Below, piece by piece: positions 1 through 54,742 of a DNA stretch of 64,000 bases. A model generated the notes under the pieces. The model worked only from the letters and a program-made list of their open reading frames with translations. It made no database searches and was not told the DNA's origin. Location: positions 158,776 through 222,775 of IMG/VR virus record IMGVR_UViG_3300036770_007547; one strand, given 5' to 3'. Each line of letters opens with the position of its first letter. The first letter of the stretch is position 1. The position numbers and the translations under genes were made by a program.

Positions 1-1
1 G

Positions 2-27909: not shown

Positions 27910-27924
27910 TTAGGACAAAGTAGC

Positions 27925-30719: not shown

Positions 30720-31060
30720 AACAATACCCTGCATTGATCCAGGCCATGCAGCAACGCATGCCTTTGCCTGCACCGCCGCAGTATCGTCTCTATTACGACG
30801 ATCTAGGAAGGCCGATAACTTACACCACCGAAGATTTGCCCGGTAATTATGTGGTGCTCACTGTGGACGAGTATGCGTTTGCCAGCCCACATGTGCGTGT
30901 GAAAAACGGCAAGTTGATCACAGTGTCGCGGCGCCCGGCCGAGAAACTGATATCAGTGTCGGATCACGGACAAAGATGTCATCCCTGTGATGTCACAGTG
31001 ATAGTGTCTGAATCAATGCCAGCAAGATTATGGAGATTACAAGATGAATCCACGATATGA
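30716..31060 (+). CDS. Hypothetical protein
   Basis: 114-aa ORF overlapping its neighbours in the operon. Confidence 0.7.
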   Translation: MKQYPALIQAMQQRMPLPAPPQYRLYYDDLGRPITYTTEDLPGNYVVLTVDEYAFASPHVRVKNGKLITVSRRPAEKLISVSDHGQRCHPCDVTVIVSESMPARLWRLQDESTI

Positions 31061-31973
31061 CATCGCGGACCTAGATTGCATATTCCTCACCTACGACGAA
31101 CCACAACGCGAAGAATTTTGGGTGAAAATCAAAAACATGATCCCTTGGGCTCAACGAGTGGATGGTGTCAAGGGATCGGATGCTGCACACAAGGCCGCGG
31201 CCGATGCCAGCCAAACCGAACGGTTCGTCCTCATCGACGGGGACAACATACCCGACATGGAGTTTTTTAATTTGATACTAGAGTTCCCCACATTGGAACA
31301 TCAACAAGCAGTGTATCGATGGCGGGCCAGGAATCACATCAATGGATTGATGTACGGCAACGGGGGCATCAGTTCATGGACACGCGAATTCGCATGGAAC
31401 ATGCGCACACATGAAAACACCGACGGTCGAGAAGAAACACAGGTGGAATTTTGTTTCGATCCCCTTTACTGGTCCATGCATGATTGTTATTCGACCACAT
31501 ACCCCAACGGCAGTGCTTTCCAGGCCTGGCGTGCGGGGTTCCGAGAAGGTGTCAAGATGTGCTTGGATCAAGGACGCCGACCTACAGTCGCAGAATTCCG
31601 CGAACGAGTACACAGTCGAAATCTCGACAATCTCACTGTATGGCACAATGTGGGCGACGATGTCGAACATGGTATCTGGGCCATCATGGGCGCCAGGATG
31701 GGAACTTATCTGACCATGTTGGATGATTGGGACTATCGAGAGGTACAGAGCTTTGACGCTCTAGCCAAACTTTGGGAAGTGGAACAATACGTGGATCCCT
31801 ACGAAGCCGCCGATACCTATGCCAAAGGTTTGCGAACACGGTTGGATCTTCCCACGTGCAGACTTGACCCCGAACAAAGCCGATTCTTCAAGCATCATTA
31901 TCGCAGCAATTGGTCGAACCTGGGTGTGATGGTGCGCGAGATCGATGTCATACGTCGCCAGGAAGGATGGTAA
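31044..31973 (+). CDS. Glycosyltransferase-like protein (GT-A, DxD)
   Basis: CIFLTYDEP, RVDGVKGSDAAHKAAA, FVLIDGDN, NGLMYGNGG, AWRAGFREGVK. Confidence 0.55.
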   Translation: MNPRYDIADLDCIFLTYDEPQREEFWVKIKNMIPWAQRVDGVKGSDAAHKAAADASQTERFVLIDGDNIPDMEFFNLILEFPTLEHQQAVYRWRARNHINGLMYGNGGISSWTREFAWNMRTHENTDGREETQVEFCFDPLYWSMHDCYSTTYPNGSAFQAWRAGFREGVKMCLDQGRRPTVAEFRERVHSRNLDNLTVWHNVGDDVEHGIWAIMGARMGTYLTMLDDWDYREVQSFDALAKLWEVEQYVDPYEAADTYAKGLRTRLDLPTCRLDPEQSRFFKHHYRSNWSNLGVMVREIDVIRRQEGW

Positions 31974-33005
31974 TTGAACATAATCGGTCTCGATGATGGC
32001 TATCGATTCAAACTCGAAAGCATGCCACGTGGCGCACACAAGTCCCAACCCATAACACATCGTTGCAATCGACCCAGTCGTGTGGTCACTGTGGACTTCA
32101 ACGGCAACTGTCTGGTGTGTAGCTGTGATGGATGGTTACCGGTACCAGTGGGGCAGGTACAAGATTTCAGCACACTGGATTCGGTATGGGCTTCGTCGCG
32201 GGCACAGATGTTGCAACAAGACATAGACCAAGGAAGGTTCACCTGGTGCGCTGTGGAACACTGTGGCATCAAGCACAACGACATTGACCATGGCATGTAC
32301 GAACTCGCCATCAACATCGATGAAAGCTGCAACCTTTCCTGCGCCAGCTGCCGACGTGACACCATCATGCATACCACCGGTGCTGTGGTCGAGAAAAAAC
32401 AACAAGACATGCAGCGCATACTGGAATGGTTGGAGGATTTTGATCGACCTTTGCATGTGGTGACTTCGGGCAACGGAGATCCGTTGGCCAGCGTGGTCAT
32501 GCGTAAATTCCTGCAGAATTATCAACCTCGCCCGGCACAGTTTTGGACCATGTTCACCAACGGACTGTTGATCAAAAAACAGCTGGAACGACTGCCTGTG
32601 CTGGCAGCTATAAAAAATTTCCGCATCAGCGTGGATGCAGCCCGTGCCGACACATATGCTCGCGTGCGTCGCGGTGGACATTGGCCCACGCTCATGGAAA
32701 ACTTTGAATTCCTGCAAAATTTTGACGGCGACTTTGAAGTCACTGTGAATTTTTGTGTGCAACAAGCCAACTATCAAGAGATACCCGAGTTCATCGCACT
32801 GTGCCAAACGCATGGATTCAAGCCACACATACACGAACTCGATGACTGGGGCACCTGGGATCGATTCCACGAACACAATGTGTTGGACCTCCGTCATCCC
32901 GACCATGTGGCTTGTCGGAACATCGTGGAATCCAGCCTGGGTAAAAATCACAAACGTCGATGGTTTTTCAGCACAAGACTCTTGGAGCTATTGTCACTGA
33001 CATGA
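31974..33005 (+). CDS. Radical SAM protein with N-terminal twitch-like Cys domain
   Basis: CNLSCASC (CxxxCxxC); N-terminal C...GNCLVCSC...C...C; GNGDP in place of GGEP; FRISVDAA. Confidence 0.85.
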   Translation: MNIIGLDDGYRFKLESMPRGAHKSQPITHRCNRPSRVVTVDFNGNCLVCSCDGWLPVPVGQVQDFSTLDSVWASSRAQMLQQDIDQGRFTWCAVEHCGIKHNDIDHGMYELAINIDESCNLSCASCRRDTIMHTTGAVVEKKQQDMQRILEWLEDFDRPLHVVTSGNGDPLASVVMRKFLQNYQPRPAQFWTMFTNGLLIKKQLERLPVLAAIKNFRISVDAARADTYARVRRGGHWPTLMENFEFLQNFDGDFEVTVNFCVQQANYQEIPEFIALCQTHGFKPHIHELDDWGTWDRFHEHNVLDLRHPDHVACRNIVESSLGKNHKRRWFFSTRLLELLSLT

Positions 33006-34393
33006 CCAACAAAAGCCATTTCATGAACGCGGCCGAAGAGATGCAGAAGAAACTGGCGGCTGTGAGTCCCAGTCTTTGCCTGGCCAAATGGAAACAGACC
33101 AGCCTGCATCTCACCACAGGACACACCAACTCGTGCTATCATCCACCCCTGCATCGCATACCCATCGAGCCCTTGGCCCAGGATCCCGGTGCCTTGCACA
33201 ACACAGATCACAAGCGACAGCAGCGAGTGATGATGCTGAAGGGAGAACGTCCTGCAGAATGCCAGTACTGCTGGAACATGGAAGACCTGGGCCATCTCAG
33301 TGATCGTCATTATCGCAGTGGCGAACCCTGGGCAGCCATAGACTTTGATCGCATCGCCAACAGCCAAGGAGACGAACTTGATGTTATCCCCAGTTATGTT
33401 GAAGTCAATTTTAGCCATGCTTGCAATCTTAAATGCAGTTATTGTAGTCCGCAATTCTCATCGACTTGGGGCGACGAAGTGGCCAGACTGGGCGGCTATC
33501 CTACTAGCACTCCTCATAATGCACCTGAGTATTTTCATGGTGATCGCCGACCTATTCCGTTACGGGAGCATAATCCCTATGTAGAGGCCTTCTGGCAGTG
33601 GTGGCCAACACTGTATCCCCGCCTGCAACATTTCCGCATGACCGGAGGCGAACCGCTCATGGACCGGAACACCTACCGAGTGTTTGACTATGTGTTGGCC
33701 ATGCCCAAGCCTGACCTGCATCTCAATGTCACGTCGAATTTCAGCGTGGAACCAGGCCTGTGGGTCAAATATTTAGATTATGTTGAGCGCCTGTGTGCCA
33801 CCAACATCGAACATTTCATGCAGTACGTGAGCCTGGATTCGGGCATACGAGAACATGCTGAATACATACGTCATGGACTCAGCATGGGTAGGATTCATAC
33901 TTACGTGGATGAATACCTAGAACGTGTGCCGGGACGTAACAGTCTCACTTTCATCATCACCATGAACAATCTATCGGTGTTGGGACTGCAACGTCTGTTA
34001 GAATATATACTGGAGTTGAGACAGACACACAGCAAGACCTATCAAAAGATCTGGTTTGATACTCCCGTATTGCGTCAACCCGCATGGCAGAGCCTGCAGA
34101 TCTTGCCCGAGAGTTATGCTGCCACCCTGGAGCGCACTGCTGACTGGATGGAGCTGAACATGGAAACGCCGGATGACCCATTCCATGGATTCAAAGACTT
34201 CGAAGTGCAGCGCCTGCGCCGCGACATAGCCTGGATGCGCGAAGGTCAGCGACTGGACCATGACCAGGCCCAAGCCGACTTTTACAGATTCTTTGCCGAA
34301 CACGACCGCCGCCGCGGCACTGATTTTTTACAGACCTTTCCCGAAATGCGCGAGTGGTGGAAACACTGTGAACGTCTCTCCAATCAAACATAG
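33002..34393 (+). CDS. N-terminal twitch-domain radical SAM protein
   Basis: Likely start ATG 33002. CLAKW...SCYHP...CQYCW; CNLKCSYC; MTGGEPL. Confidence 0.9.
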   Translation: MTNKSHFMNAAEEMQKKLAAVSPSLCLAKWKQTSLHLTTGHTNSCYHPPLHRIPIEPLAQDPGALHNTDHKRQQRVMMLKGERPAECQYCWNMEDLGHLSDRHYRSGEPWAAIDFDRIANSQGDELDVIPSYVEVNFSHACNLKCSYCSPQFSSTWGDEVARLGGYPTSTPHNAPEYFHGDRRPIPLREHNPYVEAFWQWWPTLYPRLQHFRMTGGEPLMDRNTYRVFDYVLAMPKPDLHLNVTSNFSVEPGLWVKYLDYVERLCATNIEHFMQYVSLDSGIREHAEYIRHGLSMGRIHTYVDEYLERVPGRNSLTFIITMNNLSVLGLQRLLEYILELRQTHSKTYQKIWFDTPVLRQPAWQSLQILPESYAATLERTADWMELNMETPDDPFHGFKDFEVQRLRRDIAWMREGQRLDHDQAQADFYRFFAEHDRRRGTDFLQTFPEMREWWKHCERLSNQT

Positions 34394-35510
34394 ACTTTTT
34401 CTAGATGAGTTCAGCAACGTACAAAGCTGTCTACGGCCCTGGGCCCACCACACTTTCCATGACCTAGCTGCCAGCTATCACGGACCTGGGTGCTATGTAC
34501 TGAGTCGTCAACAGTTGGTGCAGAACATCGAACTGGTACGCAAGTTATGCGAGCTCGATGATCATGTCATGGTGTTGGAAAATTCTTCGGAAGGATCGGA
34601 GACACTCACTGGCCATTTCCGACAAATGGGCATCGAAGAATTGGTACGATCTCGACGCTTGCTGGTGATCGCGGGCGGAGACATGGATCACACATATCCA
34701 CATCTGCTTTATCAGCATTTTTTGTGTTGTGTGCTTGATTATCCGGAAAATCGTCTGGCGCAACAACGCACACAAGACATATTTGACCACAAGTCCCGGC
34801 CCTACGACTTCATGTTCCTGAACGGTCGTGGCCGCGGGCATCGACGCTATCTATGGCATCGATTCCAACAGTTGGGTCTGCTGGATCGTGCCTTGTGGAC
34901 CATGCTGGATGGCCGCCCCATATACCCCACTGGACTGACTTTGCACCACAGCGGACATGATCTCATGAGCGATGTCATACCCTTGCAGTGGTTGCCGACA
35001 AAGTATGAATATCATGAATTCCGAGACTCGCAAGTGATTCCTGGCCCGCCCAATCGCACCTTTGTCAAGCCCGAACTGTTCAAACACACCTGGGGCGACA
35101 TTTATCTGGAACCACAGGGCTATGTTGACACCTATTTCAGTGTGGTCACCGAAACTGTGTTTGAATCGCAACACAGTTTTTTCACTGAAAAGATAGCCAA
35201 GCCCTTGGCCCAGGGCCATCCCTGGATAGCAGTGGCCAATCCTGGATTCTACCGGGATTTGCGTGCCCTGGGATTCAGAACTTTTTCACATGTGATAGAC
35301 GAAAGTTTTGATGCCATCCAGGATCATCAGACTCGTCTAGAGCGCATAGTTGCCGTGGTGCAAGACATTTGCCGACAGGACCTTTCGGCTTTTGTGGATG
35401 CCTGCCAGGAGGTGTGTAAATACAATCAGCGCCATCTAGCAGCATTTTCACAATCACATCGCCGGAAATTGCCCCGACGATTTTTTGATTTCATAAAAAC
35501 CAATGAATGA
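34368..35510 (+). CDS. GT-B-like (GT10/exostosin-like C-terminus) putative glycosyltransferase
   Basis: Likely GTG start at 34368. YFSVVTET...FFTEKIAKP...PW...LRALGFRTF..VIDESFD motif, shared with two paralogues at 44.6-46.9 kb. Confidence 0.5.
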   Translation: MNVSPIKHRLFLDEFSNVQSCLRPWAHHTFHDLAASYHGPGCYVLSRQQLVQNIELVRKLCELDDHVMVLENSSEGSETLTGHFRQMGIEELVRSRRLLVIAGGDMDHTYPHLLYQHFLCCVLDYPENRLAQQRTQDIFDHKSRPYDFMFLNGRGRGHRRYLWHRFQQLGLLDRALWTMLDGRPIYPTGLTLHHSGHDLMSDVIPLQWLPTKYEYHEFRDSQVIPGPPNRTFVKPELFKHTWGDIYLEPQGYVDTYFSVVTETVFESQHSFFTEKIAKPLAQGHPWIAVANPGFYRDLRALGFRTFSHVIDESFDAIQDHQTRLERIVAVVQDICRQDLSAFVDACQEVCKYNQRHLAAFSQSHRRKLPRRFFDFIKTNE

Positions 35511-36840
35511 CATCGAGTATCGCCAACAAATCCTGGACAATATATCCGCCAGCTTTTGTGCAGCCAAATGGTACAACGCCACGATATGGTTGGGATCGGG
35601 CCAGACCACGTCGTGCCATCACCCGCCCGCTCATGCCATAGACATCACAGCCATCCATGACAATCCCAAGGCCTTACATAACACGTCCGCTAAAAAACAA
35701 GACCGCGCTGACATGCAGGCTGGTCGTAGACCCGCTGGTTGCGAGTATTGCTGGAAGATCGAAGACATGGGCAGAGACGCTGTGTCGGATCGTGTATACA
35801 AGAGCCGCATATACCCGATCCAGGCTATATATGATGCAAGCGAGATGGATCCGAATGTGGACGTCGATCTCCGCACGCTGGAGATTGCCTTTGACCGCAC
35901 TTGTCAGCTGGCTTGTTCTTACTGTAATCCTGCTTTTAGCTCTACCTGGGTTAAAGACATCCGGACTCATGGACCATATCTGGCCCTGGAATCTGATGGT
36001 CGAAACCATTTTACTCACGCTCATGATCATGCCCAGTTGTATCGCTTCGGTGAGGATAATCCATATATCAGCGCGTTTTTTCGGTGGTGGGAAACGGACC
36101 TCCACCGCACCTTGGACGAGCTGCGCATCACTGGTGGCGAACCGCTCATGTCGGGATATACATGGCAATTGCTGGAATGGTTCAAGGCGAATCAGGGTCG
36201 TTCCAAGACGCGTCTAGCCATCAACTCAAATCTCAGCATCACACGTCAGCGTCTCCGGGAATTCATTGAAGCCACGCAGTACATAGAAAATCTCGATGTT
36301 TACACCAGCAACGAAAGTGTTGGCGGCCAGGCCGAGTACATACGTGACGGACTTGACTATGATCTCTGGATGCACAATGTACAAGAACTCCTGGAACATC
36401 AACACATCCGCGCAGTACACAGCATGTGTACCATCAATGCACTTTGCTTGGACAGTCTGCCGGAATATCTGGACCAACTGATACAGCTGAAAAAACACTA
36501 CGGACGAGATCGAGTCAATTTCACTCTCAACATACTGAGATTTCCCAGCTTCCAATCACCGTTGGTGTTGCCCGATGACTTGCGAACATGCTATCGTGAT
36601 CGTTTGGTCCAGTTCATGGTCAAACACAAAGGATGTTCGTATCTGCACGAACACGAATGGCGGCATCTGCAACGACTGGTAGACTATCTAGACGTGGTCA
36701 AAACTCCGCACGCTGGCGCACGTGAACGATCGGTGTTGCAAAATGATTTCGCCAAGTTTTATCAACAGTATGATCAGCGACGCGGCAAATGCTTTGTCGA
36801 AACTTTTCCGGGAATGGCCCAATGGTACAGTCAACTATAG
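35503..36840 (+). CDS. N-terminal twitch-domain radical SAM protein
   Basis: CAAKW...SCHHP...CEYCW; CQLACSYC; ITGGEPL. Clear paralogue of 33002-34393. Confidence 0.9.
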   Translation: MNDIEYRQQILDNISASFCAAKWYNATIWLGSGQTTSCHHPPAHAIDITAIHDNPKALHNTSAKKQDRADMQAGRRPAGCEYCWKIEDMGRDAVSDRVYKSRIYPIQAIYDASEMDPNVDVDLRTLEIAFDRTCQLACSYCNPAFSSTWVKDIRTHGPYLALESDGRNHFTHAHDHAQLYRFGEDNPYISAFFRWWETDLHRTLDELRITGGEPLMSGYTWQLLEWFKANQGRSKTRLAINSNLSITRQRLREFIEATQYIENLDVYTSNESVGGQAEYIRDGLDYDLWMHNVQELLEHQHIRAVHSMCTINALCLDSLPEYLDQLIQLKKHYGRDRVNFTLNILRFPSFQSPLVLPDDLRTCYRDRLVQFMVKHKGCSYLHEHEWRHLQRLVDYLDVVKTPHAGARERSVLQNDFAKFYQQYDQRRGKCFVETFPGMAQWYSQL

Positions 36841-38528
36841 ATTTTTCACACATCGGGATTCTCCGAGATCGCGAGATATTGGCATCGATAAATCTCGACG
36901 AGTTTGAATATTCGGCCATGACATGGCCGGGTTGGATCGAACAAAAATTGCGCAGTCTCCATCGACCAGTTTTTGACGATCATCAGAGATTGGTGTTTTA
37001 TTATCACGAAGATTACTACACTGATCACAGTGTGGTAGGCAAAAAAATCAAGTGTCTACAGGAAAAGCTGAATCTAGTGGACATCTCGAATTTTTTCTGT
37101 GTGATCATCAGCAGCAATCCTGCACTGGATCAAGAGATCCAAGAGTTGAAACAGATCTCGACAGATCCAACGCCGTTGGGTCATGCCACTGTGGCTGGAT
37201 CTTACAATAGATCACAGCTGGAGTCCAAACGTCGTTACTCGTACTCCAGTCCCGAACCAGTTGGAGTCAGCCTGGACAGCCTCTCGCCCCGGCATCAATA
37301 TCTGCTGTCAGAGAGCCAGTATTTTTGCATGTATCCTTGGACGCATCTTCATGCTTGGCCCACCGGTGAAGTGTGGCCATGCTGCATGGCCGATTCCAAG
37401 CCGGGTCCCTTGGGCAATTCAAAGACCCAGGAGCTGAAGATGATCTGGAACGGCGATAAAATGAAACAACTGCGCCTCGACATGCTGAACGAAAAACCCA
37501 ACGATCTTTGTGTGCGCTGTTACGAAAAAGAACAGAGTGGATTTTTCAGCGGACGTCGCAGCGCCAACAAGCATCAGGGACACCACATCTCCAAGATAGA
37601 CAGCACCGGCATTGATGGGTCAGTGGAAGACTTCCAGATGGTGTATTGGGACATAAGATTCAGTAATCTTTGCAATCTCCGGTGTCGCACTTGTGGATAT
37701 ATCTTCAGCAGCCAATGGTGGAAAGATCAAAAGAAACTCATGGGCGAGTGGGGTGACAAATGGGCTCGGGAAACTCCGGTGTTGAACTATGCTGGACGGC
37801 ACGAAACTGACATGTGGGAACAGATGATGCCACATCTTGACTACGTAGAACAGATCTACTTTGCTGGCGGCGAACCCTTGCTCATGGAAGAACACTATCT
37901 CATATTAGACGAACTGGTCCGACGCGAGCGATTTGATGTGAGATTGATATACAACACCAATTTCACCGAAACCAGACTGAAAGATCGTTTGGTTTTCGAG
38001 TATTGGAAGAAATTTGATTCAGTGAGCGTGGGCGCCAGCCTTGATGCCATGGGCCCACGTGCAGAATACATCCGCAAAGGCACTGACTGGTACCAGATCG
38101 AATCCAATCGTGAAAAGATGTTGGAGATATGTCCCGACGTGGATTTCTATGTCAGTCCCACGCTCAGTATATTGAATGCATATCATATCTCAGAATTCCA
38201 TAGAGATTGGACCCAGCGTGGATTGATACAAGCGCAAGATCTCAATGTCAACATCTTGCAAGATCCCCTGCACTATCGAATCGATGTGGCCACACAGCCG
38301 ATGAAACTCGAACTCAGTGCCATGTGGAAAGATCACCTGGACTGGTTAGAACCACAGGACTCGCTCAAGCGAGCCACGAACGGATTCAAGAGTGCGATAT
38401 CTTTCTTGAACAACATCGATAACTCACACATGATTCCAGTGTTCTGGGCCAAGACCAACGAACTAGATGCCATACGCAACGAACGTTTGTTGGACCATGT
38501 TCCTGAATTGAAGGCATTACAAGCATGA
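36789..38528 (+). CDS. N-terminal twitch-domain radical SAM protein with extra ~170-aa N-terminal domain
   Basis: CMYPW...VWPCC...CVRC; CNLRCRTC; FAGGEPL. Start may be ATG 36822. Confidence 0.9.
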   Translation: MLCRNFSGNGPMVQSTIDFSHIGILRDREILASINLDEFEYSAMTWPGWIEQKLRSLHRPVFDDHQRLVFYYHEDYYTDHSVVGKKIKCLQEKLNLVDISNFFCVIISSNPALDQEIQELKQISTDPTPLGHATVAGSYNRSQLESKRRYSYSSPEPVGVSLDSLSPRHQYLLSESQYFCMYPWTHLHAWPTGEVWPCCMADSKPGPLGNSKTQELKMIWNGDKMKQLRLDMLNEKPNDLCVRCYEKEQSGFFSGRRSANKHQGHHISKIDSTGIDGSVEDFQMVYWDIRFSNLCNLRCRTCGYIFSSQWWKDQKKLMGEWGDKWARETPVLNYAGRHETDMWEQMMPHLDYVEQIYFAGGEPLLMEEHYLILDELVRRERFDVRLIYNTNFTETRLKDRLVFEYWKKFDSVSVGASLDAMGPRAEYIRKGTDWYQIESNREKMLEICPDVDFYVSPTLSILNAYHISEFHRDWTQRGLIQAQDLNVNILQDPLHYRIDVATQPMKLELSAMWKDHLDWLEPQDSLKRATNGFKSAISFLNNIDNSHMIPVFWAKTNELDAIRNERLLDHVPELKALQA

Positions 38529-39736
38529 TACCGCACGACAAATTTTGCGTGTTGCCCTGGATCAGTCTAGAGACTTCACCTGTGGGCACAGTGCGGCCTT
38601 GCTGTCTGGCCGAACACGAGATCGTGGATGATCTCGGCTGCAAATTCAATCTTGATCGCGCAAATCTCCATGAGATCCAACACAGCGCACACATGCGTCG
38701 ACTGCGACAACAGTTCCTGGACGGTGAGAAACCCACCACATGTCGCAAGTGCTGGAGCGAAGAAGACGCTGGTCGCACCAGCAAACGCATGCACACCTTG
38801 GATCGTCTCAAGCACATCGTCAAAGATGAAGAATGGACTGTGGATGCCCGGCCTTTGATGTTCCTTGATCTCAAGCTGGGCAACATCTGCAATCTCAAAT
38901 GCAGGATCTGCGGATCATGGAGCAGCTCTTCGTTTGCCACTGAAGAAATATCAAACATACCCGATCCGGCATTCCGCAAAAGCAGTGTCCACTATCAGAT
39001 GCTGAAGCAAGGCGCCTGGCCCCGAGAGAATCCCACATTCTGGGCGCAGATCGACGGATTACTAGATCAGATCCGCTACATCGAATTCACCGGCGGTGAA
39101 CCTTTCATGATCCAAGAACACTTTGACATGCTGCAAGGCATGGTGGATCGTGGCATCGCTCACAACGTAGAGATACACTACAATACCAATGGCACACAAT
39201 GGCCCGAGGGTGCCGAAGCGATATGGCAGCACTTCCGGACTGTGGAAATCGCATTCAGCATCGACGATCTTGATCAACGATTCGAATATCAAAGAACCAA
39301 TGCAGCGTGGACCGAAGTCGTGGCCAATCTAAGTCGTTTCCGCGAGCTGCGGTCACGGCACCGGAACATACAGTTACAGGTGTGTAGCACAGTCAACATC
39401 TTCAATGTATGGCACCTCGAAGGCCTGGCCGAATGGATCGACCAGCAGGATTTCGATTTCATTTACTGGAACATGTTACACGAAGCCCGACATTTCAGTA
39501 TATCAGCTCTGCCGCCCGGAGCCAAGATGTTGGCAGCCCAGAGATTGGACACAGCCACAGTCAGCGATTTCCATCGCAGAGAATTTGATTTGATCCGGGA
39601 TTTCATGATGGCCGGAGAAAGCATGCCCGTGGAAACCATCCGCGAACAGATCCGGAGACTGGATCAGCGACGCGACCAGGACTTGAGATCCACGATCTGG
39701 GAATTGGCCGAGGCCCTGGACTATGACCCGACCTGA
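38525..39736 (+). CDS. N-terminal twitch-domain radical SAM protein
   Basis: CVLPW...VRPCC...CRKC; CNLKCRIC; FTGGEPF. Confidence 0.9.
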   Translation: MIPHDKFCVLPWISLETSPVGTVRPCCLAEHEIVDDLGCKFNLDRANLHEIQHSAHMRRLRQQFLDGEKPTTCRKCWSEEDAGRTSKRMHTLDRLKHIVKDEEWTVDARPLMFLDLKLGNICNLKCRICGSWSSSSFATEEISNIPDPAFRKSSVHYQMLKQGAWPRENPTFWAQIDGLLDQIRYIEFTGGEPFMIQEHFDMLQGMVDRGIAHNVEIHYNTNGTQWPEGAEAIWQHFRTVEIAFSIDDLDQRFEYQRTNAAWTEVVANLSRFRELRSRHRNIQLQVCSTVNIFNVWHLEGLAEWIDQQDFDFIYWNMLHEARHFSISALPPGAKMLAAQRLDTATVSDFHRREFDLIRDFMMAGESMPVETIREQIRRLDQRRDQDLRSTIWELAEALDYDPT

Positions 39737-41018
39737 CTCTTTTTGTATGGCACCGTGGACTCACACTTATGTGAGCCCACAGACTGAGCGCAGGATGTGC
39801 TGTGCCAGCCGCGAGCCTGCGCAGAATTTCCAGCAGTACATAGACACAGCCGCAGGCACAGGCCAGTACATCCCCATCACCCTAGACGAACACTGGAACA
39901 GCGATCACATGCGCAGCGTGCGTCGCAGGATGATGGCCGGGGACACCTTGCCTGAATGCGAAGTATGCAACAATCAACTGCTCAACACCGCGGTCTATCG
40001 CGACTATTTCAATCAGCTGTTTGGTCACAAGTATGCGGAGGCCATAGCCAGAACAGACACAGACGGACGCACCGACATGCAGCCCGTGAGCTGGGATTAT
40101 AGATTTTCAAATCTCTGCAATTTCAAATGTAGGATGTGTGGCGACATGCTGAGTTCGAGCTGGGAAACCGAACAGCGCCAGCATGACATGATCGATTGGA
40201 GCAATCCCAAGAACGCTTGGATGCAACCCCACACACGCCAGGAAATAAGTAAGTTCCAAGACACTGTGATCGAGCGCGAGTTCGCTGCGGCAGTGGAACA
40301 ACATCGTGTGGAAGAAGTGTATTGGGTGGGTGGAGAACCGCTCATGTACGAGCAACACTGGCGCTACATGCAACGCATCATTGAACTGGGAGACGGTCCA
40401 CGTGTCTATGCTAGGTATAATACTAATCTTAGTCGTTGCCATTATCGCGGCGTGGATCTTTTTCGCGACATCCTCGATCATTTACGAGATTACCAGATCT
40501 GCGCCAGCCTTGACGGAACTGGAGCCACAGGAGAATACATCCGAACCGGACTGCGCTACGACCAATGGCTTGAAAACTTCCAACGAGGTGTGGACCACCG
40601 AAGACACAGCCGCCAATTTAGACTCGACTTCACGCTCACCCTACCCGGTTTATACGAAGTCGGAAATATACAGGAATTGGCAGACACACACCAAGTAGAA
40701 GTTTTGGCCAAAGTGGTATTCAGTTTCACTCCCGACATCGTCATGAGTCCGCTGTGCTTGCCAAGGTCGTTGCTGGAGCCGAGACTGCGGAGTCTCATGT
40801 CACAAACACACGGGGCCATGCGAGATGTGCTCGAACAATTGATAAAACGTCCCACGTTCCAGGAATCTTGGCCTGACACCTGGCAAATGGGTCTTGCTAA
40901 AGGCAAGGCTCGTGTGTTAAAATTAGAGTCCATACGCAACGACAGTTATACCATGGCCGATATTTTACGCAAGGATCCCGAAGTCCATGAATGGTGGCAA
41001 CAAATCCCAACGCATTGA
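39723..41018 (+). CDS. N-terminal twitch-domain radical SAM protein
   Basis: CMAPW...RMCC...CEVC; CNFKCRMC; WVGGEPL. Confidence 0.9.
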   Translation: MTRPDSFCMAPWTHTYVSPQTERRMCCASREPAQNFQQYIDTAAGTGQYIPITLDEHWNSDHMRSVRRRMMAGDTLPECEVCNNQLLNTAVYRDYFNQLFGHKYAEAIARTDTDGRTDMQPVSWDYRFSNLCNFKCRMCGDMLSSSWETEQRQHDMIDWSNPKNAWMQPHTRQEISKFQDTVIEREFAAAVEQHRVEEVYWVGGEPLMYEQHWRYMQRIIELGDGPRVYARYNTNLSRCHYRGVDLFRDILDHLRDYQICASLDGTGATGEYIRTGLRYDQWLENFQRGVDHRRHSRQFRLDFTLTLPGLYEVGNIQELADTHQVEVLAKVVFSFTPDIVMSPLCLPRSLLEPRLRSLMSQTHGAMRDVLEQLIKRPTFQESWPDTWQMGLAKGKARVLKLESIRNDSYTMADILRKDPEVHEWWQQIPTH

Positions 41019-42060
41019 AATCGATCTCACAGATCATCACGAACACATCATCACTCTCTACATCGATGTGGGAGACACCAGTCTCGGTCACAAATGGTTG
41101 TGCGCCCTAGAGCATTTGATCAGCGGTGAGTATCACCTAGAGAAAAACTACTGTTTCTTGGGATTTCCCGATGGTGCACGCGATGGCAACTACATCCTAG
41201 ATCAAGTCAATCACAGCATACAAGCCATCAACACCGCTGATTTGGGATATCGCATACAGGATCGGTTTGACATGGCCACCATGTTTGAACACCAACCAAG
41301 ACCACGCACCATGCGCCAGGAGCGCATGAATGACTTGCATAGATACTTTGAAGAATTACAGGGCGTGAGTGGTTCCATGAGTGTGTACTATCAAAGGGCC
41401 GATGCTGCCACGCGGTGGCACATCAGACAACTCAATCTCTTGTGTCACGAGTTCGAATCATGGGCATTGAGCTGGCGCAAACAGCTGGAAGCACCAGACT
41501 GGATCCGCCCCAGCCAGCTCATGTGTTGGTTGGGGGCTCCGAGATTCAAGCTCGAACCCCAAGACTTTGAACTGTTTGGGGTCGACACCATAAGTCGCCG
41601 CCTGGGCGGTGTGTATGTGGGTGTGAACAAAGCAGTTGGAAAGCATCACTGGGAAGTGTTCCACGACGAGGGCCGTGACAGCAGGATCGGTGAGTTGACC
41701 ACCACAGTGTTGAAGGGACAGACCGAGGCCGCCGGGGACTTTGACATCGAATGGGGCCGCTATGCCGGGGACCAACCTTGGCAACTGGCCGAGCTGGAGG
41801 CTTTCCGTGATTGGCTGAGAGACAACGGGTTTGATCCCGAAGACAAAAGTCTCACTATCGGTCATCCCTGTGTGGCGCAAGTGGATCTCCAGCGCAGCTT
41901 TGGTTCAGAACATTATCGCGACATTTGGCAGCAATTAAATACGCATCTAAACGTGGCAGAGATACGAACTCCAAATGCAAGAACCACGTACCAGTATCGT
42001 TGGAGCGACACTGGATATGCTCAAAAACAAATTGATGTGATCAGCAAGGAAATGTCATGA
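40987..42060 (+). CDS. Hypothetical protein
   Basis: 357-aa ORF with operon-style overlaps; no motif recognised. Confidence 0.75.
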   Translation: MNGGNKSQRIEIDLTDHHEHIITLYIDVGDTSLGHKWLCALEHLISGEYHLEKNYCFLGFPDGARDGNYILDQVNHSIQAINTADLGYRIQDRFDMATMFEHQPRPRTMRQERMNDLHRYFEELQGVSGSMSVYYQRADAATRWHIRQLNLLCHEFESWALSWRKQLEAPDWIRPSQLMCWLGAPRFKLEPQDFELFGVDTISRRLGGVYVGVNKAVGKHHWEVFHDEGRDSRIGELTTTVLKGQTEAAGDFDIEWGRYAGDQPWQLAELEAFRDWLRDNGFDPEDKSLTIGHPCVAQVDLQRSFGSEHYRDIWQQLNTHLNVAEIRTPNARTTYQYRWSDTGYAQKQIDVISKEMS

Positions 42061-42158
42061 CATGGTTGAAACGATTGATCGGATGGATCAAACTAGAAAT
42101 ACGTTATCGCAGGAAACTGCGCGAGTTACGCAAACGCGACCCTTTCATTTATAAATGA
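42057..42158 (+). CDS. 33-aa highly basic peptide (MTWLKRLIGWIKLEIRYRRKLRELRKRDPFIYK), not in ORF track
   Basis: ATGA overlap with both neighbours; fills the gap exactly. Confidence 0.7.
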   Translation: MTWLKRLIGWIKLEIRYRRKLRELRKRDPFIYK

Positions 42159-43642
42159 ACATACTAGGAATCAGTGCGGGTTTCCATGACGGTTCAGTGA
42201 GCCTGGTGTCCCCGAACGGCGACATATTGTTTGCTGCCCACAGCGAAAGATACAGCCGTGTCAAAAACGATGATGGTATATCACCAGACATGCTGGCCGA
42301 AATCGACGGTACACAAATTGGCACACTGGCCTTTTACGAACGACCTTGGATGCATGGTTTGCAGCGAGCAGTGAGTGGGCAGACTCCTTTGCCACCCTTG
42401 AGCCTATCAGGCACGTTGTCCCAACATCTCAATGGCTGGTATCTGAAAAATGCCGTGGAAGATCGTAGATGCTTCTCGCATCATCTCAGTCATGCCGCTG
42501 CGGGTTTCCAGACATCACCGTTTGATGACGCCACTGTGGTGGTGATAGATGCCATTGGAGAACTTGACACTGTTTCCATCTATCGTGCCTGTTACGATGA
42601 CCAGGGCCAGGCACAGTATCAACGACTGTGGCGGCAAAGGTATCCACACAGCATTGGATTATTCTACAGTGCCGTGACCAAAGCCGTGGGACTCAAGCCC
42701 ATGGAAGAAGAATATATAACCATGGGCATGGCTGCTTATGGCAGCGATCTCGGTGCCGCCTGGATGCGCGAGCATCTCGTCGAGGATCTACAACAAGTGA
42801 GATTCCACAAGAATCTGCACATTGGATTCGATGAATACGAGTTGCCATTCACCCACAACGAAGATATCGCGGCTTCGGCCCAGGCCCTGACCGAGCAGTT
42901 GATCATGTCAGTGATGCGACGTGCTCGCGATCTCACCGGTGGTGGCAATCTCGTTTACATGGGTGGTGTGGCCTTGAATTGCCTGGCCAATCGTTTGTTG
43001 GGAGACTATTTTGATGACATTTGGATCATGCCCAATCCCGGAGATGCTGGATCGAGTCTTGGTGCAGCCGCTCTTGCTTATGGTCAGCGCCTGCGCTGGC
43101 GTGACCCTTATCTTGGTCACACTATCACTGGCGATTATCCTGTTCGTGCCCTACTCGATGATCTTGCTGACGGGGGTATTGCTGCTGTGGCTAGCGGACC
43201 AGCTGAGTTTGGTCCTCGTGCCCTAGGCAACCGTAGTCTATTAGCAGATCCTCGCGGAGAGGATATCAAGGATAGAGTCAATGAAATTAAGCGACGTCAA
43301 AAATTTAGACCCTTTGCCCCGGTCATACTGGCCGAGATGGTCAATGACTACTTTGATATGCCACCTGTTTGGCACCGCAGCGATTACATGCAAGTGGTCG
43401 CCCGGTGCCGTCGCCCTGATCTTTTTCCTGCTATATGTCATGTTGATGGCACCAGCCGAGTACAGACAGTTCCAAAGAATTCGCGATCGGGCATCCGCCA
43501 ACTCCTAGAACAATGGTATGCCCAGACCGGCTGTCCCATGTTATTGAACACCAGTCTCAATGTGCGCGGGGAACCCATGATCAACACTCGAGACGATGCT
43601 GATAGATTCACTAGATTTTACGGCGTGCCCGTGAGATCATAG
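42155..43642 (+). CDS. Carbamoyltransferase (NodU/CmcH/TobZ family)
   Basis: HDGSV, ERYSRVK, HHLSHAA, DAIGE, GGVALNC, GDAGSSLGAA, EFGPRALGNRS, RPFAP, HVDGTSRVQTV, LLNTSLN. Confidence 0.95.
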   Translation: MNILGISAGFHDGSVSLVSPNGDILFAAHSERYSRVKNDDGISPDMLAEIDGTQIGTLAFYERPWMHGLQRAVSGQTPLPPLSLSGTLSQHLNGWYLKNAVEDRRCFSHHLSHAAAGFQTSPFDDATVVVIDAIGELDTVSIYRACYDDQGQAQYQRLWRQRYPHSIGLFYSAVTKAVGLKPMEEEYITMGMAAYGSDLGAAWMREHLVEDLQQVRFHKNLHIGFDEYELPFTHNEDIAASAQALTEQLIMSVMRRARDLTGGGNLVYMGGVALNCLANRLLGDYFDDIWIMPNPGDAGSSLGAAALAYGQRLRWRDPYLGHTITGDYPVRALLDDLADGGIAAVASGPAEFGPRALGNRSLLADPRGEDIKDRVNEIKRRQKFRPFAPVILAEMVNDYFDMPPVWHRSDYMQVVARCRRPDLFPAICHVDGTSRVQTVPKNSRSGIRQLLEQWYAQTGCPMLLNTSLNVRGEPMINTRDDADRFTRFYGVPVRS

Positions 43643-54048: not shown

Positions 54049-54072
54049 TCGCGCTCCTTCATTGTATTCTAT

Positions 54073-54101
54073 ATTATACGATAATCATGATTTCTGGTCA
54101 A
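54073..54101 (-). promoter_or_regulatory. Sigma70-like promoter for the VWA gene
   Basis: - strand TTGACC (54101-54096), 17-nt spacer, TATAAT (54078-54073); GAAGGAG RBS before ATG 54048. Confidence 0.8.
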
Positions 54102-54740: not shown

Positions 54741-54742
54741 CC

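What the first reader, a model, noticed from the sequence alone, without database searches (positions are those of the whole stretch)
31974..41018. Six tandem radical SAM paralogues with inverted (N-terminal) twitch domains
Seen: CxxxCxxC motifs CNLSCASC, CNLKCSYC, CQLACSYC, CNLRCRTC, CNLKCRIC and CNFKCRMC, each preceded by a Cys cluster (C..PW/KW...CC or SC.HP...CxxC). There are two visible subtypes: 'C.AKW..SC.HP' (33002, 35503) and 'C..PW..CC' (36789, 38525, 39723), plus a divergent GNGDP member. Known: SPASM/twitch domains are usually C-terminal; an N-terminal twitch radical SAM family of unknown function exists, mostly from uncultured aquatic sources. Inference: divergent paralogues doing sequential radical chemistry on one sugar or peptide scaffold, a large Fe-S/SAM investment for a phage.
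Basis: partly seen in the sequence, partly recalled or inferred. Interest (0 to 1): 0.72.

Follow-up and report, generated by a model that had tools for sequence, protein, structure and literature searches.

The report
Phage radical-SAM sugar-tailoring gene island
A giant bacteriophage from subsurface water carries six iron-sulfur "radical SAM" enzyme genes of an uncharacterised, mostly viral family. They sit in a conserved block with sugar-modifying genes next to its tail-fibre genes, so they probably reshape an unusual sugar coat, but no member of the family has ever been assayed.

Summary
Six ORFs between 31974 and 41018 each have an intact CxxxCxxC motif, a GGE-type SAM motif and an N-terminal four-Cys twitch-like cluster.

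- **Family membership:** five of the six (R2-R6) score 288-385 bits against NCBIfam NF033640 (N_Twi_rSAM, cut-off 170). The "GNGDP" member, R1, has the same inverted layout but scores only 46 bits.
- **Not strictly tandem:** a non-radical-SAM ORF (34260-35510) separates R2 from R3.
- **Source:** the window is the end of a 223-kb fragment of a Rak2/CBB-like jumbo myovirus. Complete relatives are 337-353 kb. The fragment holds about 12 radical SAM genes.
- **Conservation:** R2-R6 are 18-33% identical to each other, yet each has its own orthologue (50-80% identity, all motifs intact) in 74-80 of 80 related viral contigs.
- **Conserved neighbours:** a carbamoyltransferase, an amidinotransferase, an NDP-4-amino-4,6-dideoxyhexose gene set and several unannotated, possibly glycosyltransferase-like ORFs, all directly downstream of baseplate and fibre genes.
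- **Arrays are the norm:** 70 of 80 diverse viral loci hold at least two copies, and fused double or triple enzymes exist.
- **No characterised relative:** none was found by sequence or by fold.

Best reading (about 0.5): position-specific radical tailoring of sugars in a phage-made glycoconjugate. The chemistry itself is inferred, not shown.

The parts
29195..30004 (+). 269-aa ORF, weakly GT8-like (N-terminal Rossmann part through an LDADY DxD motif)
   Evidence: A profile of this ORF, its paralogue 29991-30719 and their orthologues hits glycogenin (GT8) in 18 of 21 PDB matches, but only at E 0.027-1. hhalign to the Pfam-confirmed GT8 of Vibrio phage K566 gives E 0.006 and probability 6%. Present in 47 of 80 related loci and in RsoM2USA.
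29991..30719 (+). 242-aa paralogue of the previous ORF
   Evidence: (55 of 80 loci). PHROG phrog_1903, unknown function.
30716..31060 (+). 114-aa conserved ORF, unknown function
   Evidence: Orthologue in 50 of 80 loci. No family hit.
31044..31973 (+). 309-aa ORF with an invariant LIDGDN motif. It is the most conserved non-radical-SAM partner and is possibly a GT-A glycosyltransferase.
   Evidence: 63-75% identical orthologues in 67 of 80 loci. A 39% identical homologue lies directly upstream of the R2-type radical SAM gene in cultured Ralstonia phage RsoM2USA, and a second copy lies downstream. It is called 'GT2-like' only by automatic names of ESM Atlas neighbour clusters. No Pfam, NCBIfam, PHROG or PDB sequence hit.
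31974..33005 (+). R1: 343-aa radical SAM protein with an N-terminal SPASM-type Cys cluster, CNLSCASC and GNGDP. It is an accessory member outside NF033640.
   Evidence: Pfam SPASM at residues 31-97 and Radical_SAM at 117-275. NF033640 gives only 46 bits against a cut-off of 170. Present in 14 of 80 related loci, sometimes at another position.
32960..34393 (+). R2: 477-aa N-twitch radical SAM protein, subtype C.AKW..SC.HPP
   Evidence: NF033640 309 bits. Orthologues in 77 of 80 loci at 61-78% identity, motifs intact in 76 of 76. 36% identical to RsoM2USA_349.
34260..35510 (+). X3: 416-aa non-radical-SAM ORF that interrupts the array. It is one of three paralogues sharing a C-terminal E-T..F....TEK..KP....PF motif.
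   Evidence: BLASTP to 44650-45912 and 45833-46939 gives E 1e-13 to 1e-19 over the C-terminal ~105 aa. Invariant E298 T299 E310 K311 K314. Present in 56 of 80 loci. No Pfam, NCBIfam, PHROG or PDB hit. The likeness to the GT10 fucosyltransferase motif is from memory and is not verified.
35503..36840 (+). R3: 445-aa N-twitch radical SAM protein, same subtype as R2
   Evidence: NF033640 296 bits. 79 of 80 loci. Motifs intact in 80 of 80.
36789..38528 (+). R4: 579-aa N-twitch radical SAM protein, subtype C..PW..CC, with a ~175-aa N-terminal extension of unknown nature
   Evidence: NF033640 385 bits over residues 176-576. Pfam SPASM at 180-245, E 8e-13. 80 of 80 loci. Orthologue lengths vary from 419 to 552 aa.
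38525..39736 (+). R5: 403-aa N-twitch radical SAM protein
   Evidence: NF033640 332 bits. More than 7,500 metagenomic homologues at E<=1e-5. AlphaFold2 model with pLDDT 93.7 and pTM 0.90. 79 of 80 loci.
39723..41018 (+). R6: 431-aa N-twitch radical SAM protein
   Evidence: NF033640 288 bits. 74 of 80 loci at 60-76% identity.
40987..42060 (+). 357-aa conserved protein of unknown function that always follows R6. The model shows a cyclophilin-like beta-barrel with a helical insert.
   Evidence: 73 of 80 loci. AF2 pLDDT 84.6. No Foldseek PDB match at E<0.1. VIA-align gives Z about 8 to many cyclophilins over ~140 residues. AFDB cluster hits are uncharacterised proteins only.
42057..42158 (+). 33-aa micro-ORF ending in ...ELRKRDPFIYK. 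Its stop overlaps the start of the carbamoyltransferase gene.
   Evidence: Conserved in 72 of 80 loci. The same C-terminal motif occurs in at least 120 viral contigs. A carbamoyltransferase gene starts within 400 nt downstream in 73 of 120, while an N-twitch radical SAM gene is nearby in only 31 of 120.
42155..43642 (+). NodU/CmcH-family carbamoyltransferase
   Evidence: Pfam Carbam_trans_N and Carbam_trans_C, E 1e-37 and 1e-50. 64 of 80 loci. Carbamoyltransferases also recur beside N-twitch genes in bacterial loci.
43637..44659 (-). Amidinotransferase (AGAT/StrB1/SxtG/HsvA family)
   Evidence: phmmer against PDB gives E 1.7e-15 to L-arginine:glycine amidinotransferase and 1.3e-13 to inosamine-phosphate amidinotransferase. 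The C-terminal GG..C.T.D.RRRG block aligns with the catalytic-Cys block of AGAT. 52 of 80 loci.
44650..45912 (-). 420-aa paralogue of X3
   Evidence: (56 of 80).
45833..46939 (-). 368-aa paralogue of X3
   Evidence: (53 of 80).
46932..48533 (+). 533-aa ORF whose C-terminal half is homologous to the 31044-31973 protein
   Evidence: BLASTP gives 27% identity over 247 aa, E 1e-5. 18 of 80 loci; many loci end before this point.
48505..49587 (-). DegT/PseC/WecE-type NDP-4-keto-sugar aminotransferase
   Evidence: Pfam DegT_DnrJ_EryC1, E 4e-62. The best NCBIfam matches are PseC and dTDP-4-amino-4,6-dideoxygalactose transaminase, both below equivalog cut-offs.
49594..50580 (-). SDR NDP-hexose 4,6-dehydratase/epimerase-like enzyme
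   Evidence: Pfam Epimerase, E 7e-47. The best NCBIfam match is dTDP-glucose 4,6-dehydratase at 124 bits, below the cut-off of 365.
56217..56906 (-). NeuD/PglB/VioB-family sugar N-acetyltransferase, about 6 kb from the block. It may complete the amino-sugar pathway.
   Evidence: Pfam Hexapep. TIGR03570 gives 98.8 bits, below the cut-off of 160.8.

Best explanation
The block from about 29.2 to 50.6 kb is a conserved glycan-building and glycan-tailoring island in the host-recognition region of a ~340-kb Rak2/CBB-like jumbo myovirus, directly downstream of its baseplate and fibre genes.

What the N-twitch enzymes are (shown): radical SAM enzymes whose single auxiliary [4Fe-4S] (twitch) domain has moved to the N-terminus.

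What they probably do (inferred):
1. Each paralogue uses the 5'-deoxyadenosyl radical to abstract one specific hydrogen from a sugar. The sugar may be nucleotide-activated or already transferred onto the growing glycan.
2. The fully Cys-ligated auxiliary cluster then takes the electron from the substrate radical, as in BtrN. This gives a keto-sugar, or by a variant of the same step an epimer or deoxy-sugar.
3. The keto and amino positions made this way, together with those made by the co-encoded 4,6-dehydratase-like SDR and DegT aminotransferase, are decorated by the amidinotransferase (guanidino or amidino group), the carbamoyltransferase (O-carbamoyl) and an N-acetyltransferase.
4. The unannotated GT-like ORFs assemble the product.
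5. The product most likely decorates virion fibres or the infected cell's envelope.

Shown versus inferred: family membership, intact motifs, the conserved co-inherited five-enzyme set and the gene neighbourhood are shown. Substrate, chemistry, order of steps and destination of the product are inferred.
For: - Membership and intact cofactor motifs.
- The N-terminal region is homologous to the twitch domain of the sugar dehydrogenase BtrN. Profile positions 8-74 align to BtrN 188-257 at E 7.8e-4. The four conserved Cys have BtrN-like spacing.
- Invariant Arg61, Arg88 and Arg257 and nearly invariant Arg383 fit an anionic substrate such as a nucleotide or phosphate. This is inference.
- Each of R2-R6 has its own orthologue in 74-80 of 80 related contigs. 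Each also pairs with its own counterpart in a distant eight-copy array on a contig binned as Bacteriovoracaceae, with support 97-100. The set is therefore old and co-inherited, as expected for non-redundant steps of one pathway.
- Natural fusions join R2-like to R3-like, R4-like to R5-like and R5-like to R6-like domains in the window's gene order, with all motifs intact.
- Sugar context in the window: carbamoyltransferase, amidinotransferase, DegT, SDR and NeuD-type acetyltransferase.
- The same context in independent lineages: four N-twitch-type genes (two over the NF033640 cut-off, two just under it) are interleaved with two Pfam-confirmed GT8 genes and a GT4-like gene in cultured Vibrio phage K566. 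In cultured Ralstonia phage RsoM2USA, the homologue of the 31044-31973 protein and an R2-type enzyme lie behind the fibre genes. GT1, GT2, DegT and transketolase genes lie beside a triple-fused homologue. Carbamoyltransferase, GT2 and PhyH recur in bacterial loci. Another copy in this genome sits beside a sugar nucleotidyltransferase-cupin protein and a methyltransferase.
- Position behind baseplate hub and wedge genes and fibre-like ORFs.
- Literature: radical SAM cassettes and LPS-type genes in the host recognition cluster of pelagimyophages (PMC7029224), and an aminotransferase / radical SAM / amidinotransferase trio in cyanophage S-SCSM2R (PMC12801897). In that genome the amidinotransferase lies beside KdsA and KdsB.
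Against: - No member of the family has a known substrate.
- The fold search shows only the generic radical SAM core, with peptide-modifying enzymes (SkfB, CteB, anSME) scoring as well as sugar or nucleotide enzymes (BlsE, viperin, DesII) at Z about 12 and TM 0.35-0.41.
- The supposed glycosyltransferases of the window are not verified. The 31044 protein and the X3 family have no hit in any library, and the GT8 likeness of 29195/29991 is weak.
- In 63 diverse viral loci outside this clade, most neighbours have no Pfam hit. The commonest annotated neighbours are further radical SAM proteins, DUF6071, metallophosphoesterases, SMC-like ATPases and fatty-acid desaturases. Only a few are sugar enzymes.
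- No conserved Cys that could act as an H-donor for an epimerase was seen.
- Gene context cannot tell an NDP-sugar from a glycan, a lipid-linked sugar or an aminocyclitol.
- No flavodoxin or 2Fe-2S ferredoxin gene was found on this fragment.
Confidence: 0.5

Rival explanations
1. The island makes a soluble aminocyclitol- or aminoglycoside-like small molecule rather than a glycan attached to the virion or the cell. BtrN-like oxidation, transamination, amidino transfer (as StrB1 does in streptomycin synthesis) and O-carbamoylation (as TobZ does) would together build a guanidino- and carbamoyl-decorated pseudo-sugar. The phage would use it against the host or against competing phages.
For: The enzyme families match those of aminoglycoside pathways: a twitch domain like BtrN's, an amidinotransferase with E 1.3e-13 to inosamine-phosphate amidinotransferase, a carbamoyltransferase and a DegT aminotransferase. 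The authors of PMC12801897 read a similar trio in cyanophage S-SCSM2R as 'antibiotic synthesis genes'.
Against: No inositol-phosphate or 2-deoxy-scyllo-inosose synthase, exporter or self-resistance gene was seen among the ORFs scanned. The block sits in the fibre region and carries several GT-like ORFs. In K566 the radical SAM genes alternate with GT8 genes, which are typical of LPS. In S-SCSM2R the amidinotransferase lies beside KdsA/KdsB, which make an LPS sugar.
Confidence: 0.15
2. The enzymes modify a protein or peptide, as most SPASM/twitch enzymes do. Examples would be cross-links, epimerisation or formylglycine-type oxidation in the fibre proteins encoded just upstream.
For: The structural neighbours include the peptide enzymes SkfB, CteB, anSME, SuiB and ChlB at the same scores as the sugar enzymes. 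The block follows fibre-like ORFs and a 4,986-aa ORF. Many neighbours in the wider viral sample are unannotated.
Against: No RRE/PqqD domain, peptidase or transporter was found in the block. Genes abut or overlap, leaving no room for precursor genes. The one conserved micro-ORF follows carbamoyltransferases, not radical SAM genes. From general knowledge, characterised twitch enzymes mostly act on small molecules (BtrN, MoaA). The co-conserved partners are small-molecule or sugar enzymes.
Confidence: 0.15
3. The enzymes act on nucleotides or on lipids. One option is viperin-like dehydration or another nucleotide or DNA modification. Another is C-H chemistry on lipid A or fatty acyl chains.
For: There are weak core matches to viperin models and structures (NF038283 up to 28.6 bits), and the conserved arginines could bind a triphosphate. 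Fatty-acid desaturase and DUF6071 genes recur near N-twitch arrays in other viral contigs. In this window they lie beside another radical SAM gene, at 59374-62358. A PagP-annotated gene lies near the K566 array.
Against: Viperin, MoaA and QueE models all score far below their cut-offs. No DNA-modification genes are in the block. The desaturase-associated radical SAM protein of this window (61471-62358) is of the ordinary N-terminal-core type, not N-twitch. The PagP annotation was not confirmed by Pfam.
Confidence: 0.08

Closest known systems
NCBIfam NF033640, 'twitch domain-containing radical SAM protein' (N_Twi_rSAM)
   Same: R2-R6 match the whole 398-position model at 288-385 bits against a cut-off of 170. 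Three more copies in the genome also pass.
   Different: The family is only a sequence definition. No member has a known substrate, structure or paper. R1 shares the inverted layout but fails the cut-off.
BtrN (2-deoxy-scyllo-inosamine dehydrogenase, butirosin pathway), the founding twitch-domain enzyme
   Same: It has one auxiliary [4Fe-4S] bound by four Cys with nearly the same spacing. The N-terminal 70 residues of the family profile align to BtrN's twitch domain at E 7.8e-4. Both sit in a sugar or aminocyclitol context with aminotransferases.
   Different: In BtrN the twitch domain follows the radical SAM core, while here it precedes it. The cores are not specifically related. The N-twitch proteins have an extra ~100-residue helical C-terminal region with a conserved D..R motif.
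Host recognition clusters of T4-like pelagimyophages and cyanomyophages (PMC7029224), and the aminotransferase / radical SAM / amidinotransferase genes of cyanophage S-SCSM2R (PMC12801897)
   Same: Both are variable islands beside tail-fibre genes that hold glycosyltransferases, LPS-type sugar genes and radical SAM cassettes. The S-SCSM2R amidinotransferase is 29% identical to the one here.
   Different: Those papers only note the genes. S-SCSM2R has no NF033640 member over the cut-off. Here the phage belongs to another lineage (Rak2/CBB-like jumbo phages), and the five-enzyme set is conserved rather than variable.
SPASM-domain peptide maturases and anSME (SkfB, CteB, anSME)
   Same: These are the best Foldseek and VIA matches to the R5 model. 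Pfam's SPASM model recognises the N-terminal Cys cluster.
   Different: Those enzymes have a C-terminal domain, usually with two auxiliary clusters, an RRE or a peptide substrate gene nearby. None of this is present here. TM is only 0.35-0.41.
Radical SAM enzymes of sugar tailoring (DesII, BlsE; from memory also the epimerases NeoN and HygY and the dehydratase AprD4)
   Same: These set the precedent for radical H-abstraction on NDP-sugars and aminoglycosides. BlsE and DesII are among the top structural matches (Z 12.4 and 12.1).
   Different: There is no specific sequence relationship. TIGR04466 BlsE scores 16.9 bits against a cut-off of 400. No conserved H-donor Cys was seen.

Membership tests
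NCBIfam NF033640 N_Twi_rSAM | Whole-protein HMM score at or above the curated cut-off of 170 bits, with end-to-end alignment | tested here: met
   R2 309.3, R3 296.2, R4 385.1, R5 332.0 and R6 288.1 bits, covering model positions 1-2 to 387-398. This is NOT met by R1, which scores 46.4 bits over positions 108-322 only.
Radical SAM superfamily | CxxxCxxC cluster motif plus a GGE-type SAM-binding motif | tested here: met
   All six have CxxxCxxC. GGEP is invariant in R2-R6 and their relatives, and R1 has GNGDP. Both motifs are kept in every one of 74-83 orthologues of R2-R6. Pfam Radical_SAM gives E 5e-9 to 8e-5.
Twitch domain (truncated SPASM, one auxiliary cluster) | A single set of 3-4 cluster Cys, without the second CxxCxxxxxCxxxC set of SPASM, and homologous to a known twitch domain | tested here: met
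   Only four Cys are conserved in the N-terminal ~80 residues: C8, C26/27, C73 and C76 in R5 numbering. The profile aligns to the BtrN twitch domain at E 7.8e-4. Pfam SPASM matches the N-terminus in R1, R4, R5 and R6.
Twitch domain (truncated SPASM, one auxiliary cluster) | The domain actually binds a [4Fe-4S] cluster | not testable with these tools
   This needs anaerobic purification with Fe/S analysis, EPR or Mossbauer spectroscopy.
BtrN-type radical SAM sugar dehydrogenase | Two-electron oxidation of a secondary alcohol of a sugar or aminocyclitol, with the auxiliary cluster as electron acceptor | not testable with these tools
   Only the twitch-domain homology and the gene context are available. 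The cores are not specifically similar.
Viperin / prokaryotic viperin (NF038283) | HMM score at or above 180 bits | tested here: not met
   The best score is 28.6 bits, for R5.
MoaA GTP 3',8-cyclase (TIGR02666) | HMM score at or above 284 bits | tested here: not met
   The best score is 44.2 bits for R1, and no more than 27.5 bits for the others.
RiPP-type SPASM/twitch peptide maturase system | An adjacent precursor-peptide gene and a peptide-recognition (RRE/PqqD) domain or partner | tested here: not met
   No RRE/PqqD hit was found in any ORF of the block. Genes overlap or abut. The only conserved small ORF (42057-42158) co-occurs with carbamoyltransferases (73 of 120 loci) rather than with N-twitch genes (31 of 120).
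Phage host-recognition / glycan-modification island (as described for pelagimyophages, PMC7029224) | Lies beside tail-fibre or baseplate genes and holds sugar-nucleotide and glycosyl-transfer genes | tested here: inconclusive
   Position is met: baseplate hub and wedge at 3767-10416 and fibre-like ORFs at 26206-28908. Sugar-nucleotide and tailoring enzymes are met. Glycosyltransferases proper are only weakly indicated.
Amidinotransferase family (AGAT/StrB1), for ORF 43637-44659 | Full-length homology including the C-terminal catalytic-Cys block | tested here: met
   E 1.7e-15 to AGAT, with four aligned stretches spanning residues 4-340. The ...GGISCVTQDIRRRG block is aligned to AGAT's ...GGFHCWTCDVRRRG block. 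Activity was not tested.

The most novel reading that the evidence does not exclude
N-twitch radical SAM enzymes are a large, mainly viral class of oxygen-independent 'glycan editors'. Each paralogue would rewrite one position of one sugar residue, by oxidation, epimerisation or deoxygenation, after or during glycosyl transfer. A phage could then turn common host sugars into a rare, heavily decorated glycan with guanidino, carbamoyl and amino groups, without carrying a full set of NDP-sugar pathways. The arrays and fused double or triple enzymes would form an assembly line paired with glycosyltransferases. The resulting glycan would determine virion-host recognition or block superinfection.
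Probability: 0.2. Interest if true: 0.85.

Novelty: new variant of a known kind. Interest (0 to 1): 0.62.

Why it matters
- **Size of the gap:** a profile of this genome's copies finds 7,624 clusters (50% identity) at E<=1e-30 among 1.8 billion representatives. Their nearest neighbours in the ESM Atlas are almost all viral. No member of the family has a known reaction.
- **A defined system to study:** this window gives a conserved, co-inherited set of five enzymes with a fixed set of partner genes.
- **Cultured phages to test it in:** Ralstonia phage RsoM2USA has two members and Vibrio phage K566 has two to five.
- **If the sugar reading is right:** it would show a new way in which phages make unusual surface glycans, and it would add new radical chemistry for carbohydrate tailoring.
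- **If it is wrong:** the family still marks an unknown but very common activity of large phages.

Tried and rejected
- **Search for a characterised relative.** NCBIfam equivalogs are all far below cut-off. PDB by sequence, and Foldseek and VIA-align on a high-confidence R5 model against PDB and Swiss-Prot AFDB, show only the generic core. Literature searches for the family name, accession and layout found nothing specific.
- **RiPP reading.** It was rejected as the leading hypothesis once the conserved 33-aa ORF proved to follow carbamoyltransferases.
- **Heteromer test.** Complex prediction on the R4 core plus R5 gave 'no answer' (score 0.00, controls not run). This is no evidence either way.
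- **Partner ORFs.** 31044, 40987 and the X3 family have no PDB sequence hit and no NCBIfam or PHROG hit. hhalign of these families against each other and against K566 GT8 and GT4 proteins was uninformative. The 40987 model has no convincing structural relative.
- **Reductant genes.** No flavodoxin or 2Fe-2S ferredoxin was found on the 223-kb fragment.
- **Cultured-phage homologues.** R1 has no homologue in the cultured-phage collection, and megablast of the block found nothing.
- **Operon signals.** Promoter- and terminator-like sites are no more frequent than in shuffles. The operon reading therefore rests on gene overlap only.
- **Not done.** The 33-aa ORF is too short for the search for homologous proteins. 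Read laying was not used, because no RNA run holds the locus.

Full report

Each carries one CxxxCxxC motif with the quoted letters. Upstream of it lies a Cys set spaced C-x18/19-C-x42-53-CxxC (R1: CxxxxC).

Pfam finds Radical_SAM in all six and places a SPASM-type match N-terminal to it in R1, R4, R5 and R6. NCBIfam NF033640, 'twitch domain-containing radical SAM protein', matches R2-R6 end to end at 288-385 bits against a curated cut-off of 170. R1 reaches only 46 bits.

R2/R3 have C.AKW...SC.HPP, R4/R5/R6 have C..PW...CC, and R1 has GNGDP instead of the invariant GGEP.

Two corrections apply. First, a 416-aa ORF without any radical SAM feature (X3, 34260-35510) sits between R2 and R3. Second, only five of the six pass the family test.

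**2. What is the N-terminal Cys cluster?**

A profile of the eight full copies in this genome aligns its positions 8-74 to the C-terminal twitch domain of BtrN (residues 188-257) at E 7.8e-4. Only four Cys are conserved there, in both a 63-sequence and an 8-sequence alignment. There is therefore one auxiliary cluster, not the two of SPASM.

The 'inverted twitch' description is thus supported at the sequence level. Cluster binding itself cannot be tested here.

**3. Where does the window come from?**

The window is the last 64 kb of a 222,775-bp IMG/VR virus record that CheckV rates 64% complete.

- Baseplate hub and wedge proteins lie at 3767-10416, and the wedge is 34-37% identical to those of Pectobacterium phage CBB, Sinorhizobium phage Phosso and other ~350-kb jumbo myoviruses.
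- Two relatives with terminal repeats are 337 and 353 kb long.
- The best public DNA holder is a subsurface metagenome. Weaker matches come from lagoon and lake water.
- The phage carries a two-piece tmRNA of the betaproteobacterial type and seven tRNAs. This hints at a betaproteobacterial host.
- Two contigs carrying the same module are binned in a Haliscomenobacter MAG, so the host is not settled.

**4. How many radical SAM genes does the genome hold?**

The 223-kb fragment has eight NF033640 members: five here, plus copies at genome positions 1.9, 9 and 71 kb. It also has R1 and three radical SAM ORFs of ordinary layout. No flavodoxin or plant-type ferredoxin gene was found on the fragment.

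**5. The paralogues are old and individually conserved.**

They share only 18-33% identity with each other. In 80 IMG/VR loci found through R5 (51-79% identity), each of R2, R3, R4, R5 and R6 has its own orthologue in 74-80 loci, mostly at 60-75% identity. Every orthologue keeps CxxxCxxC and GGEP, and all but two keep the N-terminal Cys set. R1 is present in only 14 loci.

In a maximum-likelihood tree, each of R2, R4, R5 and R6 pairs with a single copy, and R3 groups with two copies, of an eight-copy array on a contig binned as Bacteriovoracaceae. Support values are 97-100. The set therefore predates this phage clade.

**6. Arrays and fusions are the rule in this family.**

- Among 80 diverse viral loci found with a looser alignment, 70 hold at least two copies within 6 kb, and the commonest counts are four to seven.
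- Among bacterial genome contigs, 21 of 71 loci hold at least two copies.
- Of the 150 best cluster representatives, 33 are fusions of two or three complete domains. Every domain but two keeps an intact CxxxCxxC motif.
- The fusions include R2-like to R3-like, R4-like to R5-like and R5-like to R6-like proteins, in the window's own gene order.
- A structure-based test of an R4-R5 complex gave no answer.

**7. The neighbourhood.**

From 28950 to 43642 all genes are on the + strand and abut or overlap. The partners are listed below.

| Coordinates (strand) | Protein | Evidence |
|---|---|---|
| 42155-43642 (+) | NodU/CmcH-type carbamoyltransferase | |
| 43637-44659 (-) | amidinotransferase, E 1.7e-15 to AGAT with the catalytic-Cys block aligned | |
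| 48505-49587 (-) | DegT/PseC-type aminotransferase | |
| 49594-50580 (-) | 4,6-dehydratase-like SDR | |
| 56217-56906 (-) | NeuD-family sugar acetyltransferase, about 6 kb further on | |

Carbamoyltransferase, amidinotransferase, the 31044 protein and the 40987 protein are co-conserved with the radical SAM set in 52-73 of 80 loci.

Several ORFs look like glycosyltransferases but could not be confirmed:
- 29195-30004 and 29991-30719 give consistent but weak matches to glycogenin, a GT8 enzyme.
- The very conserved 31044-31973 protein has an LIDGDN motif, and only automatic 'GT2-like' names among its Atlas neighbours point to a function.
- X3 and its two paralogues share a C-terminal TEK-containing motif. 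The motif resembles that of GT10 enzymes from memory only.
- The 40987 protein folds with confidence but has no convincing structural relative.

**8. Independent contexts.**

- In cultured Vibrio phage K566, four N-twitch-type genes alternate with two Pfam-confirmed GT8 genes and a GT4-like gene. Two of the four pass the NF033640 cut-off and two score just under it.
- In cultured Ralstonia phage RsoM2USA, a minimal version lies behind the fibre genes: two 29195/29991-like ORFs, a 31044-like ORF, one R2-type enzyme and a second 31044-like ORF.
- A triple-fused homologue lies among GT1, GT2, DegT, transketolase-type and other radical SAM genes.
- Neighbours in bacterial loci include carbamoyltransferases, GT2, PhyH dioxygenases and B12-radical SAM enzymes.
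- Against this, in 63 viral loci outside the window's clade most neighbours have no Pfam hit. The annotated ones are mainly further radical SAM proteins, DUF6071, metallophosphoesterases, SMC-like ATPases and fatty-acid desaturases, with only a few sugar enzymes.

The sugar association is therefore good for this clade and for several others, but it is not demonstrated for the family as a whole.

**9. Is there a characterised relative?**

No. All NCBIfam equivalogs (MoaA, viperin, BlsE, anSME-type and peptide maturases) score far below their cut-offs. The R5 model (pLDDT 93.7) matches SkfB, CteB, anSME, viperin, BlsE and DesII alike, at TM 0.35-0.41 and Z about 12. This is the common core only.

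The literature holds only passing mentions. One notes radical SAM cassettes in the host recognition cluster of pelagimyophages (PMC7029224). The other notes an aminotransferase / radical SAM / amidinotransferase trio in cyanophage S-SCSM2R, read there as antibiotic genes (PMC12801897). In S-SCSM2R the amidinotransferase lies beside KdsA and KdsB, and that genome has no NF033640 member over the cut-off.

**10. Peptide hypothesis.**

The block has no RRE domain and no room for precursor genes. The one small conserved ORF (42057-42158, 33 aa, ending ...ELRKRDPFIYK) is kept in 72 of 80 loci. However, its C-terminal motif occurs in at least 120 viral contigs. There it precedes a carbamoyltransferase gene in at least 73 cases and has an N-twitch gene nearby in only 31. 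It is a partner or upstream ORF of the carbamoyltransferase, not a radical SAM substrate.

**11. Most likely mechanism.**

Shown:
- radical SAM enzymes with an N-terminal single auxiliary cluster;
- a conserved non-redundant set of five;
- co-inheritance with amino-sugar, amidino- and carbamoyl-transfer enzymes in the fibre region of a jumbo phage.

Inferred by analogy with BtrN and from the fully Cys-ligated auxiliary site:
- each paralogue abstracts one hydrogen from a defined sugar carbon and passes the electron to the auxiliary cluster, giving a keto-sugar (or an epimer or deoxy-sugar);
- the other enzymes aminate, amidinate, carbamoylate and acetylate the product;
- the GT-like proteins assemble it on virion fibres or on the host envelope;
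- four arginines, three invariant and one nearly so, fit a nucleotide- or phosphate-bearing substrate.

I put this reading at about 0.5. The rivals are a soluble aminoglycoside-like product (0.15), protein modification (0.15) and nucleotide or lipid chemistry (0.08). The remainder is left open.

**12. Verdict.**

The finding is real and belongs to a curated but wholly uncharacterised family. What is new here:
- the five-member set is ancient, co-inherited and near-universal in a clade of ~340-kb phages;
- multi-copy arrays and fusions are typical of the family in viruses;
- the set has a fixed set of partner genes;
- two cultured phages offer a direct test.

Noticed in passing
window 42057-42158 (+): A 33-aa micro-ORF whose stop overlaps the carbamoyltransferase start. 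Its C-terminal ...ELRKRDPFIYK-stop is invariant in at least 120 viral contigs, while the N-terminal half varies freely. It nearly always sits just upstream of a NodU/CmcH-type carbamoyltransferase gene. It could be a small subunit, a membrane anchor or a regulatory upstream ORF.
   Followed up: partly
window 56938-57328 (-): The phage encodes a two-piece (permuted) tmRNA of the betaproteobacterial type (RF01850 116 bits, RF04321 123 bits; tag ANDEVFALAA), next to a PstS-like phosphate-binding protein gene (57286-58341). This is a hint that the host is a betaproteobacterium.
   Followed up: partly
window 61369-63799 (-): An array of seven tRNA genes (Leu, Pro, Thr, Met, Arg, Lys, Ile).
   Followed up: no
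window 10413-25373 (+): A single 4,986-aa ORF lies between the baseplate wedge gene and the fibre-like ORFs. It is presumably a giant fibre or structural protein and was not analysed.
   Followed up: no
window 59374-62358: A second small module: a DUF6071-like ORF (59374-60201, -), a fatty-acid desaturase (60014-60868, +) and a radical SAM ORF of ordinary layout with a C-terminal Cys-rich tail (61471-62358, +). DUF6071 and desaturase genes also recur beside N-twitch arrays in other viral contigs.
   Followed up: partly
window 40987-42060 (+): A conserved 357-aa protein that always follows R6. Its model is confident (pLDDT 84.6) but has no Foldseek match in the PDB. It shows only a cyclophilin-like barrel likeness at Z about 8, with an inserted helical bundle. 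Invariant His, Glu and Cys residues (C153-H154-E155-x-E157) suggest an enzyme.
   Followed up: partly
window 52771-55831 (-): A MoxR-type AAA ATPase (54743-55831) and a DUF2201 metallopeptidase/VWA protein (52771-54048) form a pair. ThyX lies at 50804-51487.
   Followed up: no
L099 and L100 (contigs NZ_JBBAKG010000003.1 and NZ_JBBAKG010000001.1, 'MAG: Haliscomenobacter sp. EUL_031'): Two contigs of 148 and 183 kb in one bacterial MAG carry the complete phage module, including fibre genes. They are jumbo-phage contigs binned with a Saprospiraceae genome, which is either mis-binning or a host clue that conflicts with the tmRNA hint.
   Followed up: partly
genome G000:C1 64000-80000 (L176) and 1-14000 (L175): Other unusual cargo lies outside the window: a sodium:solute symporter, an AMP-binding enzyme, a cytidylyltransferase-cupin fusion and a methyltransferase beside another N-twitch copy, and two ClpP-family protease genes beside a further copy.
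   Followed up: partly
P0121-P0169 (representative proteins): Natural fusions of two or three complete N-twitch radical SAM domains in one polypeptide of up to 1,203 aa. Every domain but two keeps an intact CxxxCxxC motif.
   Followed up: partly
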